Of a stretch of 64,000 nt of DNA, positions 50,481-55,730 are shown in pieces. Position 1 is the first letter of the stretch; each line of letters begins with the position of its first letter. The stretch is from IMG/VR virus record IMGVR_UViG_3300043446_004437, positions 1-64,000 of that record. The stretch is one strand, 5' to 3'. The notes under the pieces were generated by a model. It did no database searches. It saw only the letters and a list, made by a program, of their open reading frames with translations, and was not told the origin of the DNA. A program made the position numbers and the translations under genes.

Positions 50481-50555
50481 AAGATTCCCCTGGGCCAGTA
50501 ACCCTCTGCTGGCCTGGGGGATCTTTTTTTTATGACTAGGGAAAAGGTCTCTAGT
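50481..50555 (+). repeat. Terminator + ATGACTAG + hairpin cassette, copy 1
   Basis: CCCCTGG/CTGGGGG hairpin, T tract, ACTAGGGA-AAAGG-TCTCTAGT. Confidence 0.8.
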
Positions 50556-50609
50556 TAGCAGGTGTGCTTTTGCTGCTTGTGTATGTGTACTCCACAAAAG
50601 GAGAACGAA

Positions 50610-51113
50610 ATGAGCACATACTTAGTAGTGATTGCATTTCTTGTCATTTCCATGGTTCCACAGCTTTTGGCAGTGTGGTACATCAATTGGGATTTCAAGA
50701 AGGAAGCCATTGCAGAACAGTTCGTTAAGAACATGATTTCTGCTATGGATGAAATTCTTGCCCAGAAGGAATTGCAAGAAAAGGTAAACCAGTTTGTAGA
50801 AGTAGGTTTTCCAACACCTTTTGTAGTTGGCATCACTGAAAACGATGTTGATTACTACAATTGGATTGATAACTACGCTTTTGCAAATGAAGAAGAAATC
50901 AGTGATCTTGATTTCTTTGCGGAATTACTTGAAAGTGAAATTGAACGTAAATCTTGGTCAGGAGTTCCTGACGGTAACGGGATTAAGCGCTACAATGGCA
51001 CTATCAAGTGTGGGTACCAGTTGTATCATGATGGGAAATTCGTTTCTCATAACAAGATGGACTTTTTCCGTTCACACGGAATCCGCGGAAACAAGCCAAA
51101 AACACACAAGTAA
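50610..51113 (+). CDS. Membrane-anchored hypothetical protein
   Basis: AAGGAG SD; N-terminal hydrophobic helix. Confidence 0.65.
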   Translation: MSTYLVVIAFLVISMVPQLLAVWYINWDFKKEAIAEQFVKNMISAMDEILAQKELQEKVNQFVEVGFPTPFVVGITENDVDYYNWIDNYAFANEEEISDLDFFAELLESEIERKSWSGVPDGNGIKRYNGTIKCGYQLYHDGKFVSHNKMDFFRSHGIRGNKPKTHK

Positions 51114-51170
51114 TTACTAACCCGTATACATACACGGGCTGTAAGAGAACACCTGAAGATAGTCAAATAA

Positions 51171-51222
51171 AAAGATTCCCCTGGGGACTTCGGTCCCTGG
51201 GGGATCTTTTTTTTATGACTAG
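51171..51222 (+). repeat. Cassette copy 2 (second hairpin absent)
   Basis: CCCCTGGGGAC-TTCG-GTCCCTGGGGG, T tract, ATGACTAG. Confidence 0.8.
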
Positions 51223-51247
51223 TTAATAGACCTCAGAAAGGAGGTGA

Positions 51248-51427
51248 ATGCTTACCAGCAATATGCATGGGCAACGGCCTACGCCATATTGTCACATCAC
51301 GGGTGAAGGACTCATGGTGGACAAATGGGGTGACCCGTTGGATTCGTGGATAAAGTTCGTCAATGGAGAAGCCATATGTGGCCATCGCCATGCTGACGGG
51401 ACAGACCACGAGTTCCCAGCAAACTGA
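51248..51427 (+). CDS. Hypothetical 59-aa protein
   Basis: AAAGGAGGTG SD (short spacing); hand-translated. Confidence 0.45.
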   Translation: MLTSNMHGQRPTPYCHITGEGLMVDKWGDPLDSWIKFVNGEAICGHRHADGTDHEFPAN

Positions 51428-51477
51428 CTAAGAGTCAGGGCAGTGGTGACGCCTGGTAACAGAACAATCACCAACTA

Positions 51478-51542
51478 AGAAACCCCTGGAGGCCTTTGCC
51501 TCTGGGGGTTTCTTTTTTATGACTAGGGAATAGGTCTCTAGT
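51478..51542 (+). repeat. Cassette copy 3
   Basis: Hairpin, T tract, ACTAGGGA-ATAGG-TCTCTAGT. Confidence 0.8.
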
Positions 51543-51563
51543 TTTAGAGTAAAGGAGAAAGAA

Positions 51564-51779
51564 ATGGATGAGTTCTTTGAGCTCATCGAAGAGATCTATG
51601 ATCTCCAGATGAAGTGGGAGAATCTGTTGTTTGAACAACAGGTTTTGCTGTTGAGTAGGGTGAGTTGTTCAAGGGGAAGGTACGATGAGATAAATCGTGA
51701 ATTGCGTGAAGTTTGCGATGAGTGCAGTCGTATTGGAGTGTTGTTGGGAGAGAAGGAATTGGAACTCGAGAAGTTTTAA
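51564..51779 (+). CDS. Small acidic coiled-coil protein
   Basis: AAAGGAG SD; 71 aa. Confidence 0.65.
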   Translation: MDEFFELIEEIYDLQMKWENLLFEQQVLLLSRVSCSRGRYDEINRELREVCDECSRIGVLLGEKELELEKF

Positions 51780-51820
51780 TAACTCAAAGTGCAAGACCAA
51801 GAAGTGGGTATCAGGTCAAA

Positions 51821-51877
51821 GAGAAAAGGGTCCTTTTGGGCCCTTTTTTCTTTATGACTAGTGGATAGGCCACTAAT
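51821..51877 (+). repeat. Cassette copy 4
   Basis: AAAAGGGTCC/GGGCCCTTTT hairpin, ACTAGTGG-ATAGG-CCACTAAT. Confidence 0.75.
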
Positions 51878-51898
51878 CTTTAATTAAGGAGAAGAATA

Positions 51899-52225
51899 AT
51901 GAAAGAAATGGAATGGTGTGGATGCATGGATGCGCGTTCATGGAAAGATGGCTTTGCTGACATCTTTAGCAGGGAGCTAGTAGAAGGTAAAAGAAAAGGT
52001 GAGTTGTATGAATTGTTTGAAGTGAAAAGCTTTGAAGAATTCAAGGATGAGTTAAGTGATATTGCATGGGGCATAGGACGTATTGTTGGTGGTTTGTTTG
52101 GTAAGCCATATGTACGGATTATTGGTGATGCAAAGCACTACAACAAGGTTGTTTCTCGTATAAATGAATATGGTTGTATGAGGAGCAAGCGATTCTTGGT
52201 TAACGGCGAATGTCCAAACAAGTGA
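51899..52225 (+). CDS. Hypothetical protein
   Basis: AAGGAG SD; 108 aa. Confidence 0.65.
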   Translation: MKEMEWCGCMDARSWKDGFADIFSRELVEGKRKGELYELFEVKSFEEFKDELSDIAWGIGRIVGGLFGKPYVRIIGDAKHYNKVVSRINEYGCMRSKRFLVNGECPNK

Positions 52226-52239
52226 TTAAGGAGAACAAC

Positions 52240-52671
52240 ATGAAAGAAAAAGCGATAATCGTTGACATTGATGGCACTTTATTTGAAGAGGCGCCAGGCT
52301 GGACAATGGAGACTGATGCATGGTGGGTGGAAGAAACACTTAAGATGCGTGAGTTGGAAGTTGGGATTGGATTAATTAAGGTATTTAAGGAGATGGGATT
52401 TAAGTTGGTTTTCTTGACAGCAAGAGGACAAAGCTGCAAGAAGAACACTTGGATCAGATTTAAGAAAGCAGGCATTCATAGCTTGGTGGACTCGATGTGG
52501 CACAGGCCAATTAAGTGGAGCGAATTACCACCAGTTGAATACAAGAGGCTTATGATGCAACGGATTATGAAAAAGTATGATGTTGTATTTGCTATGGATG
52601 ATAGCGATAAGAACCTGGAAATGTTCAAGGGTTTGGGAATTAAAGTATTCGATGCAAAGAAATGGTGGTAA
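52240..52671 (+). CDS. HAD-family phosphatase (PNK phosphatase-like)
   Basis: IVDIDGTL, LTAR, K, AMDDS motifs I-IV. Confidence 0.85.
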   Translation: MKEKAIIVDIDGTLFEEAPGWTMETDAWWVEETLKMRELEVGIGLIKVFKEMGFKLVFLTARGQSCKKNTWIRFKKAGIHSLVDSMWHRPIKWSELPPVEYKRLMMQRIMKKYDVVFAMDDSDKNLEMFKGLGIKVFDAKKWW

Positions 52672-54217: not shown

Positions 54218-54228
54218 TCGCAATCATC

Positions 54229-54296
54229 GTTGCAATGCAGTGAGATAGCATAAGAGTTGGTTCGTCCTGCTTGTGCTATCAACTCTGTTGTGCAAC
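54229..54296 (+). ncRNA. Structured RNA motif, copy 1 (long hairpin with 3x4 internal loop)
   Basis: GATAGCATAAG/CTTGTGCTATC helix; homologous to 54637-54709. Confidence 0.6.
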
Positions 54297-54325
54297 ATCA
54301 ACAGATAACAGAAACAGAGATAACA

Positions 54326-54625
54326 ATGGCATTGTACAAGACAATGAACAACAAAGAAAAGCGTCGTCACACAGCCGAGTTTGTTGGCAAACTTTGGAAT
54401 GAGTCAGACCGACTCGTATCCGAGGCTGGCAAAATCGTGCTTGGTTGCATTCATAGCGAAGTGCAACTTGCTGGCGACAAAGAGAATCCACGCAACATCA
54501 AGTTCGACCTCAATGACGAACTCCGTGATGTCGTCGAGGCTTTCCGCACGAACTACATACTCATCAGGCACTACTCGAAGGTTCTTGGCGAACTGGATGC
54601 GTTGGTTGCCGAGGAGCAGAAGTAA
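54326..54625 (+). CDS. Hypothetical protein
   Basis: 99-aa ORF between the two motif copies. Confidence 0.6.
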   Translation: MALYKTMNNKEKRRHTAEFVGKLWNESDRLVSEAGKIVLGCIHSEVQLAGDKENPRNIKFDLNDELRDVVEAFRTNYILIRHYSKVLGELDALVAEEQK

Positions 54626-54636
54626 CCGTAATCCGA

Positions 54637-54709
54637 TTCGTACTCGGTGAGAGCGCACAAGAGATTTCCACACTAGGTATCGCTTGTGCGTTCAACTCTG
54701 TGGTATGAA
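54637..54709 (+). ncRNA. Structured RNA motif, copy 2
   Basis: GAGCGCACAAG/CTTGTGCGTTC helix with compensatory changes. Confidence 0.6.
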
Positions 54710-54761
54710 CCATAGACACAAGTTTGCAAATGCAAACTCGTGAACAGACAAGGAGAAACAA

Positions 54762-54953
54762 ATGGCTAGGATCAAGTCGGCCACCACGATCAACCCCAAG
54801 CGGTTGCGCAGGCCCAAGCACAGGGAGCTCTTGCAGCTCTTGCCCATGATGGAGTCCCTCCACGCGATGAACGGGTATGGCATCCGTACTCCAGAGGACT
54901 ACCGCCACCACTGGCGCAAGCCAAAGAACTCAAAGCCCAAGCTCAAGAAGTAG
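54762..54953 (+). CDS. Small highly basic protein
   Basis: AAGGAG SD; K/R-rich. Confidence 0.65.
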   Translation: MARIKSATTINPKRLRRPKHRELLQLLPMMESLHAMNGYGIRTPEDYRHHWRKPKNSKPKLKK

Positions 54954-55031
54954 CTGTCGGCTTAAAATCGCAAACTACCCAAGGACAAAGTCCTCCTGCC
55001 ATTGAGCAGGTAAAAAGGAGGTGAATTAAAA

Positions 55032-55313
55032 ATGAGCGACAAGACCTACACTCTCAACGAAATCGTTGAGTCAGTCAGGAAGCACTACAACTTTCTGTTT
55101 TGGCAGACGAACGGCGAGCGAACGACTGCTTCAGCTTCTGAAGCACTCCTCGTACTTGCTGTTATCGCCGGCCTTGACGAGGCAGCACATGCCAAGTGGA
55201 CGGTTGCGGACATCACGCAGATTCTTGTGGACGGCAACGTCATGCCACAAGAGGAGGCGCAGAAGTTCGCCACCAGCTGCGTTGATGAGTACAACAACGT
55301 AACGTTGTACTAA
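55032..55313 (+). CDS. Hypothetical protein
   Basis: AAAGGAGGTG SD; 93 aa. Confidence 0.7.
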   Translation: MSDKTYTLNEIVESVRKHYNFLFWQTNGERTTASASEALLVLAVIAGLDEAAHAKWTVADITQILVDGNVMPQEEAQKFATSCVDEYNNVTLY

Positions 55314-55322
55314 GAAAAACAA

Positions 55323-55389
55323 AGAATAACCCCTGGGGACTTCGGTCCCTGGGGGTTTTCTTTTTTATGACTAGAGGAAGAGCCTCTAG
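55323..55389 (+). repeat. Cassette copy 6
   Basis: UUCG hairpin, T tract, CTAGAGG-AAGAG-CCTCTAG. Confidence 0.8.
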
Positions 55390-55445
55390 CAAACCAAGGG
55401 CTTTGCCCTCCTGCTTTATGGCAGGTTAAAGGAGGTGAACTGAAA

Positions 55446-55589
55446 ATGAAAGTCAACACCTACGCAAGCGAGCGTGGTTACGGCAACTTCTGCGATGCAT
55501 GCATCCAGAGGGAGTCCGAAAACCTCGTGCAGGTGGAGTTCGTCTGTGAGACGGACGCACCGTGCGCAGGCTGCTCCGAAAAGGAGTAG
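55446..55589 (+). CDS. 47-aa Cys-rich protein
   Basis: AAAGGAGGTG SD; CDAC and CAGC. Confidence 0.65.
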   Translation: MKVNTYASERGYGNFCDACIQRESENLVQVEFVCETDAPCAGCSEKE

Positions 55590-55663
55590 TTTGCGATTGC
55601 GAAGTATGGGCTAGTACCCCATCCAGAGCAGTAGTGACGCTTTGTTAAAAATAATCACTCGTT

Positions 55664-55730
55664 AAGATTCCCCTGGGGGCTTATGCCCCTGGGGGGTCTT
55701 TTTTTTATGACTAGTGGATAGGCCACTAGT
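55664..55730 (+). repeat. Cassette copy 7
   Basis: Hairpin, T tract, ACTAGTGG-ATAGG-CCACTAGT. Confidence 0.8.

What the first reader, a model, noticed from the sequence alone, without database searches (positions are those of the whole stretch)
50481..55730. Seven terminator-ATGACTAG-hairpin cassettes partition the early region
Each has a GC hairpin (five or six with a conserved tandem U.G/G.U; three identical with a UUCG loop), a T tract, invariant ATGACTAG, and in six a second stem with compensatory changes and an A-W-R-R-G pentaloop, then an SD. A terminator needs a restart, so ATGACTAG plus hairpin is a candidate phage-polymerase promoter, antitermination or processing signal. The repeats could also shuffle single genes by recombination, like PeSL cassettes of T4-type phages.
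Basis: partly seen in the sequence, partly recalled or inferred. Interest (0 to 1): 0.68.

Follow-up and report, generated by a model that had tools for sequence, protein, structure and literature searches.

The report
Terminator-restart cassettes in a jumbo phage
Seven copies of a compact unit (strong terminator hairpin, T run, invariant ATGACTAG, second hairpin) split a hypervariable block of small genes in an uncultured 207-kb freshwater phage. Related phages carry the same unit with their own 8-mer, so it is most likely a portable stop-and-restart signal at which genes are also swapped.

Summary
ATGACTAG occurs 7 times on the + strand between 50,532 and 55,714, against 1.7 expected. Only two other copies exist in the 216-kb record.

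Each copy follows a strong intrinsic-terminator hairpin and a T run. In six of seven it forms the 5' arm of a second hairpin, 33-79 nt before a Shine-Dalgarno-led gene.

I found 96 such cassettes in 13 related phage contigs. They always lie on one strand, within 10 kb upstream of a gene I identify by fold as a QDE-1/YonO-like two-barrel RNA polymerase (58348-61707, fused to an AlkB-like domain).

The 8-mer is fixed within a genome but differs between lineages: ATGNCTAG, ATGGGTAG, GAGKATAG, ACGGATAG. An orthologous cargo gene carries a different 8-mer in each lineage. The second stem covaries and shows G.T rather than A.C mismatches, so it acts on the sense strand.

Gene content between cassettes turns over, and homology blocks and metagenome joints end inside cassettes. 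One close relative has no cassette and another has one.

Best reading (0.45): a terminator plus a non-sigma-70 restart promoter whose transcript begins with a protective 5' hairpin, a PeSL-like shuffling unit. No RNA data exist, so the promoter is inferred. RNA processing is the main rival.

The parts
50486..50557 (+). Cassette c1: terminator hairpin 50486-50521, T run 50522-50531, 8-mer 50532-50539, second hairpin 50533-50557
   Evidence: upstream fold -35.5 kcal/mol, z -6.1
51177..51244 (+). Cassette c2: UUCG-loop terminator 51177-51204, T run, 8-mer 51215-51222. The second stem is lost, and a small hairpin covers the Shine-Dalgarno sequence instead.
   Evidence: intact homologue in L133
51477..51543 (+). 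Cassette c3: terminator 51477-51514, 8-mer 51519-51526, second hairpin 51521-51543
51828..51878 (+). Cassette c4: GGGUCC-UUUU-GGGCCC terminator 51828-51843, T run, 8-mer 51854-51861, second hairpin 51856-51878 (one C/A mismatch)
   Evidence: -27.7 kcal/mol, z -4.6
53826..53888 (+). Cassette c5: UUCG-loop terminator 53826-53855, 8-mer 53864-53871, second hairpin 53866-53888 (two or three G.U pairs)
55328..55391 (+). Cassette c6: UUCG-loop terminator 55328-55357, 8-mer 55367-55374, second hairpin 55368-55391
55669..55731 (+). Cassette c7: terminator 55669-55696, 8-mer 55707-55714, second hairpin 55709-55731. It heads the conserved genes LysM-like ORF, PcfJ-like and polymerase.
58348..61707 (+). 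1119-aa protein: AlkB-like dioxygenase (about residues 10-210) fused to a QDE-1/RDR2/P74-26 gp62-like two-barrel RNA polymerase with DQDGD at 710-714. It is the last large gene of the unit headed by c7.
62465..62511 (+). Strong terminator closing the + strand unit, with no 8-mer and no second hairpin behind it
49224..49258 (.). Bidirectional terminator upstream of the array, without an 8-mer. It is conserved in the cassette-less relative G006.
49700..49884 (+). Conserved structured leader at the AT-to-GC composition step. It contains a cassette-like GTACTAGTGGGTAT and the 'L2' hairpin element 49766-49830. Homology to G006 ends at 49762.
50559..51155 (+). Cargo ORF 50610-51113 enclosed by a 32-nt inverted repeat (50559-50590 / 51124-51155). 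This ORF is absent from one metagenome variant (joint 50512 to 51196).

Best explanation
**Model.** Each cassette is a portable stop-and-restart unit.
- The GC hairpin plus U run ends the upstream transcript.
- The T run plus the lineage-specific 8-mer directly behind it is a non-sigma-70 promoter, read by a phage-specified transcription machine. The two two-barrel polymerases of this phage are the candidates.
- Initiation is at or just before position 3 of the 8-mer. The new mRNA therefore begins with a tight 5' stem-loop (8-mer positions 3-8 plus three variable pairs) that protects it. An unstructured leader of about 25-50 nt and a strong Shine-Dalgarno sequence follow.
- Because every gene module carries the same 40-60 nt of near-identical sequence at both ends, homologous recombination at the cassettes adds, removes and reorders cargo genes without polar effects. 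A phage RecA gene sits 2 kb upstream.

**Shown:** the anatomy, the conservation, the sense-strand stem, the lineage-specific 8-mer, the turnover with breakpoints in cassettes, and the polymerase fold.

**Inferred:** promoter activity, the start point, which enzyme reads it, and early timing.
For: 1. **Specificity.** There are 7 sites against 1.7 expected, none elsewhere in context in 207 kb, all on one strand.
2. **Family-wide conservation.** There are 96 cassettes in 13 contigs.
   - 91 have an upstream hairpin of -10 kcal/mol or better.
   - 88 have 8-mer positions 3-8 paired downstream.
   - 87 are followed by a Shine-Dalgarno sequence and a start codon, at a median of 53 nt.
3. **The 8-mer is a genome-specific address.** It is invariant within a genome (TTT+ATGACTAG in 29 of 29) but reads ATGNCTAG, ATGGGTAG, GAGKATAG or ACGGATAG in other lineages.
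   - The orthologous 108-aa cargo gene is preceded at 45-52 nt by ATGACTAG (G000, G002), GAGTATAG (L170) or TTGGGTAG (L184).
   - The junction behind that gene carries ATGCCTAG, GACAATAG or TTTGGTAG in three lineages.
   - This pattern points to a co-evolving trans factor.
4. **No sigma-70 features.** There is no -10/-35 at any cassette (column counts). The genome has no sigma-70 region 2 and no T7-type polymerase.
5. **Two candidate polymerases.** The genome has two two-barrel polymerase paralogues. The arrays always lie directly upstream of the first one.
6. **Terminator and 8-mer travel together.** G007 against G006 is a gene replacement that brings both or neither. Terminators at unit ends lack the 8-mer.
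7. **The T run stays with the 8-mer.** The 8-mer keeps its T run in the 5 cassettes whose upstream hairpin is weak or gone. This point is partly circular, because the scan required a T run.
8. **The second stem is selected on the sense strand.**
   - 18 double changes, with 0 of 500 shuffles reaching this.
   - Position 4 pairs A-T 27, G-C 7, C-G 6, G.T 2.
   - Non-Watson-Crick pairs are G.T 19 against A.C 4, p = 0.003.
   - The closing helix is kept even when the apex is replaced by another hairpin.
   - So the 8-mer is in the RNA, and a start must lie at or before position 3.
9. **Precedents from the literature.**
   - phiKZ non-virion polymerase starts at the G of T-A-T-G and depends on downstream sequence (PMC4666361).
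   - P23-45 uses a virion two-barrel polymerase on a cluster of conserved promoters before small pre-early genes, with conserved terminators (PMC10770324).
   - PeSL terminator/promoter units mediate shuffling in T4-type phages (PMC4122927).
10. **Shuffling.**
   - Homology blocks end at G8 of c1 (95.8% block), at the end of the c5 hairpin, or start at the c4 terminator.
   - By my count, 14 of 30 listed joint ends in four independent metagenomes fall inside cassettes, which make up 8% of the stretch.
Against: - **No transcript data.** No RNA run holds the stretch, so no start or end of any RNA is observed.
- **Weak link to this polymerase.** The polymerase-1 tree is not congruent with 8-mer type, since ATGGGTAG occurs in two clades. 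G006, 97% complete with a 70%-identical polymerase, has no cassette at all. This polymerase therefore does not need the motif to do its main job.
- **No cassette heads a unit.** Every cassette lies between co-directional genes, so read-through plus processing would fit equally well.
- **The motif is confined to the array.** T run + TATG is not used elsewhere in the genome.
- **RNA processing does occur nearby.** A hammerhead-like ribozyme sits in the same region.
- **The G.T/A.C test** counts related cassettes that are not fully independent.
Confidence: 0.45

Rival explanations
1. **RNA punctuation without a promoter.** The array is read through from one upstream promoter, with the terminators acting as attenuators. 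The U run + 8-mer + hairpin is a cleavage or binding site for a lineage-specific, phage-encoded endoribonuclease or RNA-binding protein, working like Cas6/Csy4 or like the RNase III sites of the T7 early region. Cleavage leaves the upstream RNA capped by the terminator hairpin and the downstream RNA capped by the 5' hairpin.
For: - The stem is selected on the sense strand, and the 8-mer forms its base.
- The 8-mer is lineage-specific, as expected for a co-evolving protein.
- All cassettes lie between co-directional genes.
- A conserved hammerhead-like self-cleaving motif and long gene-enclosing inverted repeats (likely double-stranded RNA) lie in the same region. Transcript processing is therefore a theme here.
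Against: - A strong terminator directly in front of a processing site wastes most transcripts.
- Terminator and 8-mer are gained together in G007, which is what a restart needs and what a processing site does not.
- No nuclease candidate was identified. The cargo ORFs match no family.
- G006 and G007 are near-identical, so any factor must already exist in the cassette-free phage.
Confidence: 0.22
2. **Antitermination or regulatory RNA site (nut-like).** A linear box (the 8-mer) plus a hairpin in the nascent RNA loads a phage factor onto the polymerase, or binds a translational regulator. This sets how much transcription passes the next terminator or how well the next gene is translated.
For: - An 8-nt conserved box overlapping a short hairpin with a purine-rich pentaloop recalls boxA/boxB.
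- There is one site per terminator-bounded interval.
- The sequence is lineage-specific.
Against: - The conserved part is the base of the helix, not the loop. Loops vary and can be replaced by a whole extra hairpin.
- To be transcribed at all, the site needs read-through of the strong terminator 10 nt upstream.
- The invariant TTT in front has no role in this model.
- The unit-end terminators show that the element is not part of termination.
Confidence: 0.1
3. **Primarily a recombination or mobility site.** The cassettes would be attC-like, REP/IS200-like hairpin sites, or miniature mobile elements that move gene modules by a dedicated enzyme. Transcriptional effects would be secondary.
For: - The array has one orientation and hypervariable cargo.
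- Breakpoints lie inside cassettes.
- A cassette of about 100-115 nt is present or absent between the same two genes.
- The hairpin is selected on one strand.
Against: - No tyrosine integrase and no Y1/HUH transposase were found in the genome.
- There are no attC core sites.
- One clean joint shares 27 nt on both sides, as homologous recombination gives.
- At orthologous junctions the 8-mer has changed in step with the lineage. This indicates in-place selection by a trans factor rather than recent insertion.
- The fixed spacing of about 50 nt to the start codon points to an expression role.
Confidence: 0.08
4. **Ordinary host sigma-70-type early promoters behind terminators**, that is, true PeSLs.
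For: - ATGACT resembles a -35 hexamer (TGAC core).
- TAGTTT follows in some cassettes.
- The T run could act as an UP element.
Against: - The spacing to TAGTTT is 14 nt.
- Columns 24-29 show no TAnnnT.
- The promoter scan finds none at any cassette.
- In other lineages the box is GAGTATAG or ATGGGTAG, which have no -35 likeness.
- A host promoter would not change with phage lineage while the cargo gene stays the same.
Confidence: 0.05

Closest known systems
PeSL (promoter-early stem-loop) cassettes of T4-type phages (Arbiol 2010, PMC2839356; Comeau 2014, PMC4122927)
   Same: - Both are short composite terminator/restart units repeated in a hyperplastic block of small ORFans.
- Each genome has its own version.
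- Indels and replacements between close relatives have their ends in the units.
   Different: - PeSL promoters are recognisable sigma-70 types (TTGACA-N17-TATAAT and variants). Here no -35/-10 exists.
- Here the conserved part is one 8-mer directly behind the T run that is also the 5' arm of a second, covarying hairpin.
- The phage is not a recognisable T4 relative and carries two-barrel polymerases.
Pre-early/early promoter clusters of phages with their own two-barrel polymerases (P23-45 gp96/gp64, PMC10770324; phiKZ, PMC4666361)
   Same: - Many small genes each have a strongly conserved, non-sigma-70 motif, with conserved terminators, next to the gene of a second phage polymerase.
- The phiKZ late motif TATG, with its start at the G, resembles T-run+ATG here.
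   Different: - Those promoters were mapped by 5'-end sequencing and in vitro transcription. Here nothing is mapped.
- Those motifs are not hairpin arms.
- The polymerase here is a separate, AlkB-fused lineage closest in fold to QDE-1.
T7 early-region RNase III sites, and Cas6/Csy4-type hairpin processing
   Same: Repeated hairpins between genes partition a polycistronic early RNA and leave protective stem-loops at the ends.
   Different: - The stem here is only 8-9 bp, too short for RNase III.
- A strong terminator precedes each site.
- No Cas6-like or other nuclease was identified.
N4 virion-polymerase hairpin promoters
   Same: A short hairpin with flanking conserved bases marks early genes of a phage that brings its own polymerase.
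   Different: - The N4 hairpin (5-7 bp stem, 3-nt loop) is read on the template strand upstream of the start.
- Here the wobble bias puts the hairpin on the sense strand.
- No N4- or T7-type polymerase is present.
Lambda nut sites (boxA + boxB)
   Same: A linear 8-9-nt box lies next to a short hairpin with a purine-rich pentaloop, and the sequence is phage-specific.
   Different: - nut lies after a promoter and acts over many terminators.
- In nut the loop is the recognised part. Here the loop is free to vary and the helix base is fixed.
Integron attC arrays
   Same: Both are one-orientation arrays of promoterless-looking single genes separated by structured, strand-specific repeats, with cargo differing between relatives.
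   Different: There are no R''/R' core sites, no IntI and no attI. The repeats here are terminators plus an expression signal.

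Membership tests
Intrinsic (factor-independent) terminator | GC-rich stem-loop followed directly by a U run of about 7-9 nt | tested here: met
   All 7 are found by the terminator scan. Upstream folds are -20 to -34 kcal/mol. 91 of 96 cassettes in relatives are at or below -10 kcal/mol.
Intrinsic (factor-independent) terminator | Transcript 3' ends in the U run | not testable with these tools
   No RNA run holds the stretch.
PeSL cassette (T4-type phages) | Stem-loop terminator joined to a sigma-70-type early promoter (-35, about 17 nt, -10) | tested here: not met
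   The terminator is present. No -35/-10 is found at any cassette, and there is no conserved TAnnnT at the right distance in 29 aligned cassettes.
PeSL cassette (T4-type phages) | Located in hyperplastic regions, flanking ORFs that differ between close relatives, with indel ends in the repeats | tested here: met
PeSL cassette (T4-type phages) | Host genome is a T4-type myovirus | tested here: inconclusive
   There is no DNA match to any isolate. The replicase is DnaE-like, unlike T4. There are only weak baseplate-like hits. Capsid and terminase were not examined.
Promoter of a phage-encoded RNA polymerase | Motif invariant within a genome, changing between lineages, upstream of genes, on the coding strand only | tested here: met
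Promoter of a phage-encoded RNA polymerase | Motif type tracks the polymerase phylogeny | tested here: inconclusive
   GAGKATAG is confined to one clade and ATGACTAG-only to another. ATGGGTAG appears in two clades, and clade A includes cassette-free genomes.
Promoter of a phage-encoded RNA polymerase | Primary transcript 5' ends at the motif, and initiation in vitro | not testable with these tools
   No RNA data, and no isolate.
Two-barrel (double-psi beta-barrel) RNA polymerase, YonO/QDE-1-like (for the 58348 protein) | Fold match to solved two-barrel polymerases | tested here: met
   The model has pLDDT 78. Foldseek hits are QDE-1 5fsw_A at E 5e-8, RDR2 7w82 at 3.5e-6 and phage P74-26 gp62 8f5m_A at 1.6e-4, all with probability 1.00.
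Two-barrel (double-psi beta-barrel) RNA polymerase, YonO/QDE-1-like (for the 58348 protein) | Metal-binding DxDGD loop | tested here: met
   DQDGD lies at 710-714 and is the only D.DGD in the genome. D710 and D712 are invariant in 22 homologues. The structural superposition of the motif itself was not inspected.
Integron attC site | R''/R' core sites (RYYYAAC / GTTRRRY) and an IntI tyrosine recombinase nearby | tested here: not met
   No such cores are present in the cassettes, and the genome has no PF00589 match.
IS200/IS605- or REP-type hairpin site | A Y1 HUH transposase (TnpA/RAYT) in the genome | tested here: not met
   No PF01797 match.
N4-type hairpin promoter | Template-strand hairpin with a 3-nt loop upstream of the start, and an N4/T7-like virion polymerase | tested here: not met
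   The wobble bias favours the sense strand. Loops are 4-7 nt. No PF00940 match was found (the search's control genomes do not carry this family either), and the giant ORFs match only structural families or none.

The most novel reading that the evidence does not exclude
The T-run + 8-mer + hairpin is the promoter class of a so far undescribed lineage of single-subunit two-barrel RNA polymerases. These are QDE-1-like, here fused to AlkB, and widespread in uncultured freshwater jumbo phages. Specificity would be set by about 5 bases that differ between phage lineages, and the start point would be placed so that every transcript is born with a protective 5' hairpin. The same unit, welded to a terminator, would serve as the recombination joint that lets these phages trade early and anti-host genes.
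Probability: 0.3. Interest if true: 0.82.

Novelty: new variant of a known kind. Interest (0 to 1): 0.66.

Why it matters
- **Testable promoters for a new polymerase lineage.** Promoters are unknown for most phage two-barrel single-subunit polymerases. The YonO promoter was undefined in the 2017 paper I read. A set of 96 natural sites in four or five specificity classes, each next to its polymerase gene, gives a ready template-and-enzyme panel for in vitro work. It could also yield short orthogonal terminator-promoter insulators for synthetic operons.
- **PeSL-type shuffling beyond T4-type phages.** The PeSL idea would extend to an unrelated, uncultured phage group. The direct evidence is three states of the same locus (0, 1 and 7-17 cassettes) and orthologous junctions whose 8-mer changed in step with the lineage.
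- **If the rival is right.** It would then be a natural protein-guided RNA punctuation system in a phage, which would also be new.

Tried and rejected
- **DNA and literature searches.** DNA similarity to 50,697 isolated phages gave no match, so no characterised relative or transcriptome exists. Rfam gave no family for the cassettes at gathering or at E<=1, only chance leader or sRNA hits over the terminators. A literature search for the 8-mers found nothing relevant.
- **First pattern scan.** The longer pattern that included the second stem worked.
- **AAAAGATCTTTT.** This palindrome is over-represented genome-wide and looked like an 'empty' terminator site. All copies are inside coding sequence, so I dropped it.
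- **Mini-ORF idea (AUG ACU AG...).** Rejected, because other lineages have GAG or ACG in place of ATG.
- **T run + TATG as a genome-wide promoter.** Not enriched outside the array.
- **Other polymerase types.** There is no sigma-70 region 2. No T7-like polymerase was found (the search's control genomes do not carry that family either). The four giant ORFs (1436-3817 aa) and ten further large ORFs gave only structural or DnaE hits, or none.
- **Tree against 8-mer type.** Not congruent enough to assign the motif to the 58348 polymerase.
- **Sequence search of the 58348 protein.** The PDB gave nothing, and Pfam and PHROGs gave nothing. Only the fold search identified it.
- **Cargo ORFs.** No Pfam or PHROG family.
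- **Not run.** I did not infer the host.

Full report
**Setting.** The window is the first 64 kb of a 216,024-bp IMG/VR virus record.
- Its first 8,647 bases recur at the end, so the unique genome is about 207 kb.
- It is an uncultured freshwater jumbo phage of about 35% G+C.
- It has no DNA match among 50,697 isolated phages and carries a DnaE-type replicase.
- Genes at 1-47 kb run leftwards. A rightward block starts with a RecA gene at 47667.
- At about 49,760 the composition jumps from about 33% to 44-51% G+C, and it stays high to about 66 kb.

- ATGACTAG occurs seven times, all on the + strand, between 50,532 and 55,714. The expected count is 1.7, and no shuffle of 100 reaches 7.
- The whole record has just two further copies, both inside genes and without context. 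A one-mismatch scan that requires a T run finds only the seven plus one chance site.
- Each copy follows a strong GC hairpin and an 8-10-nt T-rich run.
- c2, c5 and c6 share one UUCG-loop hairpin. Six of seven have the tandem U.G/G.U of CCUGG.
- In six of seven the 8-mer is the 5' arm of a second hairpin of 8-10 pairs, with loops AAAGG, AUAGG or AAGAG.
- c2 has lost the 3' arm by a small deletion. Its counterpart in a relative still closes the helix.
- A Shine-Dalgarno sequence and a start codon follow 33-79 nt after the first base of the 8-mer.
- The intervals are not all single genes. They hold 1, 1, 1, 5, 4 and 1 ORFs, and then six genes follow c7.

**It is a family trait, not a quirk of one genome.**
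- A pattern scan of IMG/VR found the same unit in several large contigs.
- In each whole record the sites sit on one strand in one cluster. G001/G002 have 7 TATGACTAG sites. The complete 209.7-kb G003 has 11.
- I fetched loci around homologues of the 58348 protein and scanned them. This gave 96 distinct cassettes in 13 contigs.
- Of the 96, 91 have an upstream hairpin of -10 kcal/mol or better, and 88 have 8-mer positions 3-8 paired downstream. 87 are followed by a Shine-Dalgarno-led ORF, at a median of 53 nt.
- The arrays always lie within 10 kb upstream of that protein's gene, on its strand.

**The 8-mer is lineage-specific.**
- Within the ATGACTAG group, TTT+ATGACTAG is invariant in 29 of 29 cassettes.
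- Relatives also use ATGCCTAG and ATGGCTAG.
- Other lineages use ATGGGTAG (with TTGGGTAG and TTTGGTAG), GAGTATAG/GAGGATAG/GACAATAG, or ACGGATAG. All come directly after TTT, and all form the 5' arm of a hairpin.
- The orthologous 108-aa cargo gene (51899-52225; 74-94% identical proteins) is preceded at 45-52 nt by ATGACTAG here and in G002. In L170 it is preceded by GAGTATAG, and in L184 by TTGGGTAG.
- The junction behind that gene carries ATGCCTAG, GACAATAG or TTTGGTAG in three lineages. This genome has no cassette there.
- So the box changes in place, in step with the phage. This is what a co-evolving trans-acting reader would produce.

**The second hairpin acts on the sense strand.**
- In a fixed register the three inner pairs show 18 double changes. 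None of 500 shuffles reaches this, and the slid controls are much lower.
- Position 4 of ATGNCTAG pairs A-T 27 times, G-C 7, C-G 6, G.T 2, and is unpaired 3 times.
- When the apex is replaced by another hairpin, the closing helix GACUAG/CUAGUC persists.
- I chose 17 cassettes by a strand-neutral rule. Among them the non-Watson-Crick pairs are G.T 19 against A.C 4, p = 0.003. The cassettes are related, so this p value is generous.
- The helix therefore matters in RNA, or in the non-template DNA strand. The 8-mer must then be part of the transcript.

**The 58348 protein.**
- Pfam, PHROGs and a PDB sequence search gave nothing.
- Homologues abound in metagenomes. Many are fused to PIF1-type helicase, DprA/SLOG or NADAR domains.
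- An AlphaFold model built on 22 homologues reached pLDDT 78.
- Its residues of about 260-1119 match the QDE-1 and RDR2 RNA polymerases and the non-virion polymerase gp62 of Thermus phage P74-26. Residues 10-210 match AlkB-type dioxygenases.
- DQDGD at 710-714 is the only such motif in the genome. Its first two aspartates are invariant in the family.
- A diverged paralogue lies at genome 71924-74557 (profile E 7e-36; DEDD in place of DQDGD).
- The genome has no sigma-70 region 2. The search for a T7-type polymerase also found none, but its control genomes do not carry that family either.
The activity itself is untested.

**Turnover at the cassettes.**
- Few of the ORFs between RecA and the PcfJ-like gene have homologues in G002, G003, L133 or L140. 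Those that do sit in other orders.
- G006 is 97% complete with a 70%-identical polymerase, and it has no cassette. Homology to it stops at 49762 and resumes at 55744, just after c7.
- Its near-twin G007 differs by one gene replacement. That replacement brings in a terminator plus TTTAATGACTAG plus hairpin.
- Homology blocks with other contigs end exactly at cassette landmarks.
  - 49740-50539, at 95.8% identity, ends at the last base of the c1 8-mer.
  - 53550-53888 ends at the c5 hairpin.
  - 51818-52227 starts at the c4 terminator.
- I laid contigs of four independent freshwater and aquaculture metagenomes on the stretch. The joints include c1 to c2 (683 nt skipped, 27 nt shared), c6 to c7, c3 to c6, c7 back to c1 and c5 back to c2. 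There is also a 114-nt insert between 52227 and 52229.
- By my count, 14 of 30 listed joint ends lie inside cassettes, which cover about 8% of the stretch.
- Caveat: these are short assembly contigs crossing repeats, and joints with short sides may be from other relatives. The IMG/VR comparisons are independent of them.
- No integrase and no Y1 transposase is present. A phage RecA gene is next door. Homologous recombination is the simplest mechanism.

**What it most likely does.** The arguments for a stop-and-restart unit are:
- Terminator and 8-mer come and go together.
- Terminators that close a unit (49224-49258 and 62465-62511) lack the 8-mer.
- The T run stays with the 8-mer in the five cassettes whose hairpin has decayed. 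That scan required a T run, so this point is partly circular.
- The spacing to the start codon is tight.
- The box is genome-specific.
- No sigma-70 signal exists.

The sense-strand helix requires a start at or before position 3, so I propose initiation at the purine or G of T-run+RNG. The phiKZ non-virion polymerase starts in this way at the G of TATG (PMC4666361). This would give an mRNA whose first nucleotides are locked in a stem. From general knowledge of RNase E biology, that is a classic 5' stabiliser.

P23-45 offers a second precedent. There a virion two-barrel polymerase reads a cluster of conserved promoters before small pre-early genes, with conserved terminators, and one of those genes encodes the second polymerase (PMC10770324).

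**Weaknesses.**
- No RNA run holds the phage.
- The polymerase-1 tree does not separate the 8-mer classes cleanly.
- G006 shows that the polymerase has work to do without the motif.
- Every cassette lies between co-directional genes, so read-through plus cleavage by a lineage-specific RNA-binding enzyme fits the same anatomy.
- That rival gains some colour from a hammerhead-like motif with an intact core at 53078-53137. It is conserved in G003 with compensatory changes. It also gains from two long inverted repeats that enclose single genes.

**Comparison and novelty.**
- In function the unit works like a PeSL (PMC4122927). It is not a member of that family, because the defining sigma-70 promoter was tested and not met.
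- It is not an attC, REP, N4-type or nut element on the features I could test.
- I rate it a new variant of a known kind. It is a composite terminator/restart shuffling cassette with an unusual single-box, hairpin-forming restart signal. It lies in a new phage group that carries a new lineage of two-barrel polymerases.

Noticed in passing
window 53078-53137 (+); L144 3707-3775 (G003): A type II hammerhead-like motif with an intact core (GCGAAAC, GUC, CUGAAGA) lies between two cargo genes. It scores 29.5 bits here and 32.6 bits in G003, both below Rfam's cut-off of 37. The two copies differ by compensatory stem changes, so it may be a real self-cleaving ribozyme that cuts the operon RNA.
   Followed up: partly
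window 53152-53182 / 53509-53539, and 50559-50590 / 51124-51155: Long inverted repeats (31 nt at 97%, 32 nt at 78%) bracket single ORFs (53216-53500, a small membrane protein, and 50610-51113). In RNA they would form long duplexes joining the 5' and 3' untranslated regions. They may be RNase III targets or module ends.
   Followed up: no
window 54269-54291 and 54682-54704: A second repeated intergenic element sits at the 3' side of two large hairpins and ends in GCTTGTGC..TCAACTCTGTkGT. One metagenome contig skips 54308 to 54750 between them, which removes ORF 54326-54625.
   Followed up: no
window 49766-49830; L162 6893 and 7505; L158 6885; after some cassettes in G002, L133 and L140: A third recurrent element ('L2') consists of hairpin GTCnATTGGnnGAC followed by TAAAC..CATGAnCC. 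In the cassette-free relative G006 it, rather than cassettes, separates the genes. One gene replacement (G006 against G007) ends at it.
   Followed up: partly
window about 49,760 to about 66,000: A sharp composition step from about 33% to 44-51% G+C coincides with the start of the cassette and polymerase block. The block may have a separate origin. PcfJ-like and polyvalent-protein-like genes suggest a conjugative-element source.
   Followed up: no
window 58348-61707; genome 71924-74557 (L149 7924-10557): There are two paralogous QDE-1-like two-barrel polymerases. The first is fused to an AlkB-like dioxygenase. Homologues elsewhere are fused to PIF1 helicase, DprA/SLOG or NADAR domains. The second has DEDD where the first has DQDGD.
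   Followed up: partly
window 49500-49700, both strands: An AT-rich divergent intergenic region holds two tandem 27-nt units (49624-49677) and several T-run+TATG or ATACCTAT motifs on the minus strand, ahead of a small acidic leftward ORF (49277-49471). It may be a promoter or origin region.
   Followed up: no
window 1-8647 = genome 207378-216024: The record's two ends are the same 8.6 kb. This is either a long terminal repeat or an assembly overlap of a circular map.
   Followed up: no
window 8850-12259 (-): Two large ORFs rich in GGX-type (collagen-like) repeats account for a local G+C peak of 48-55%.
   Followed up: no
L144 15024-15082 (G003 147,023-147,081): In one G003 cassette the GC terminator is replaced by an AT-rich hairpin built from the same GACTAGTA/TACTAGTC words as the 8-mer stem. 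This suggests that hairpin-2 units can duplicate into the terminator position.
   Followed up: no
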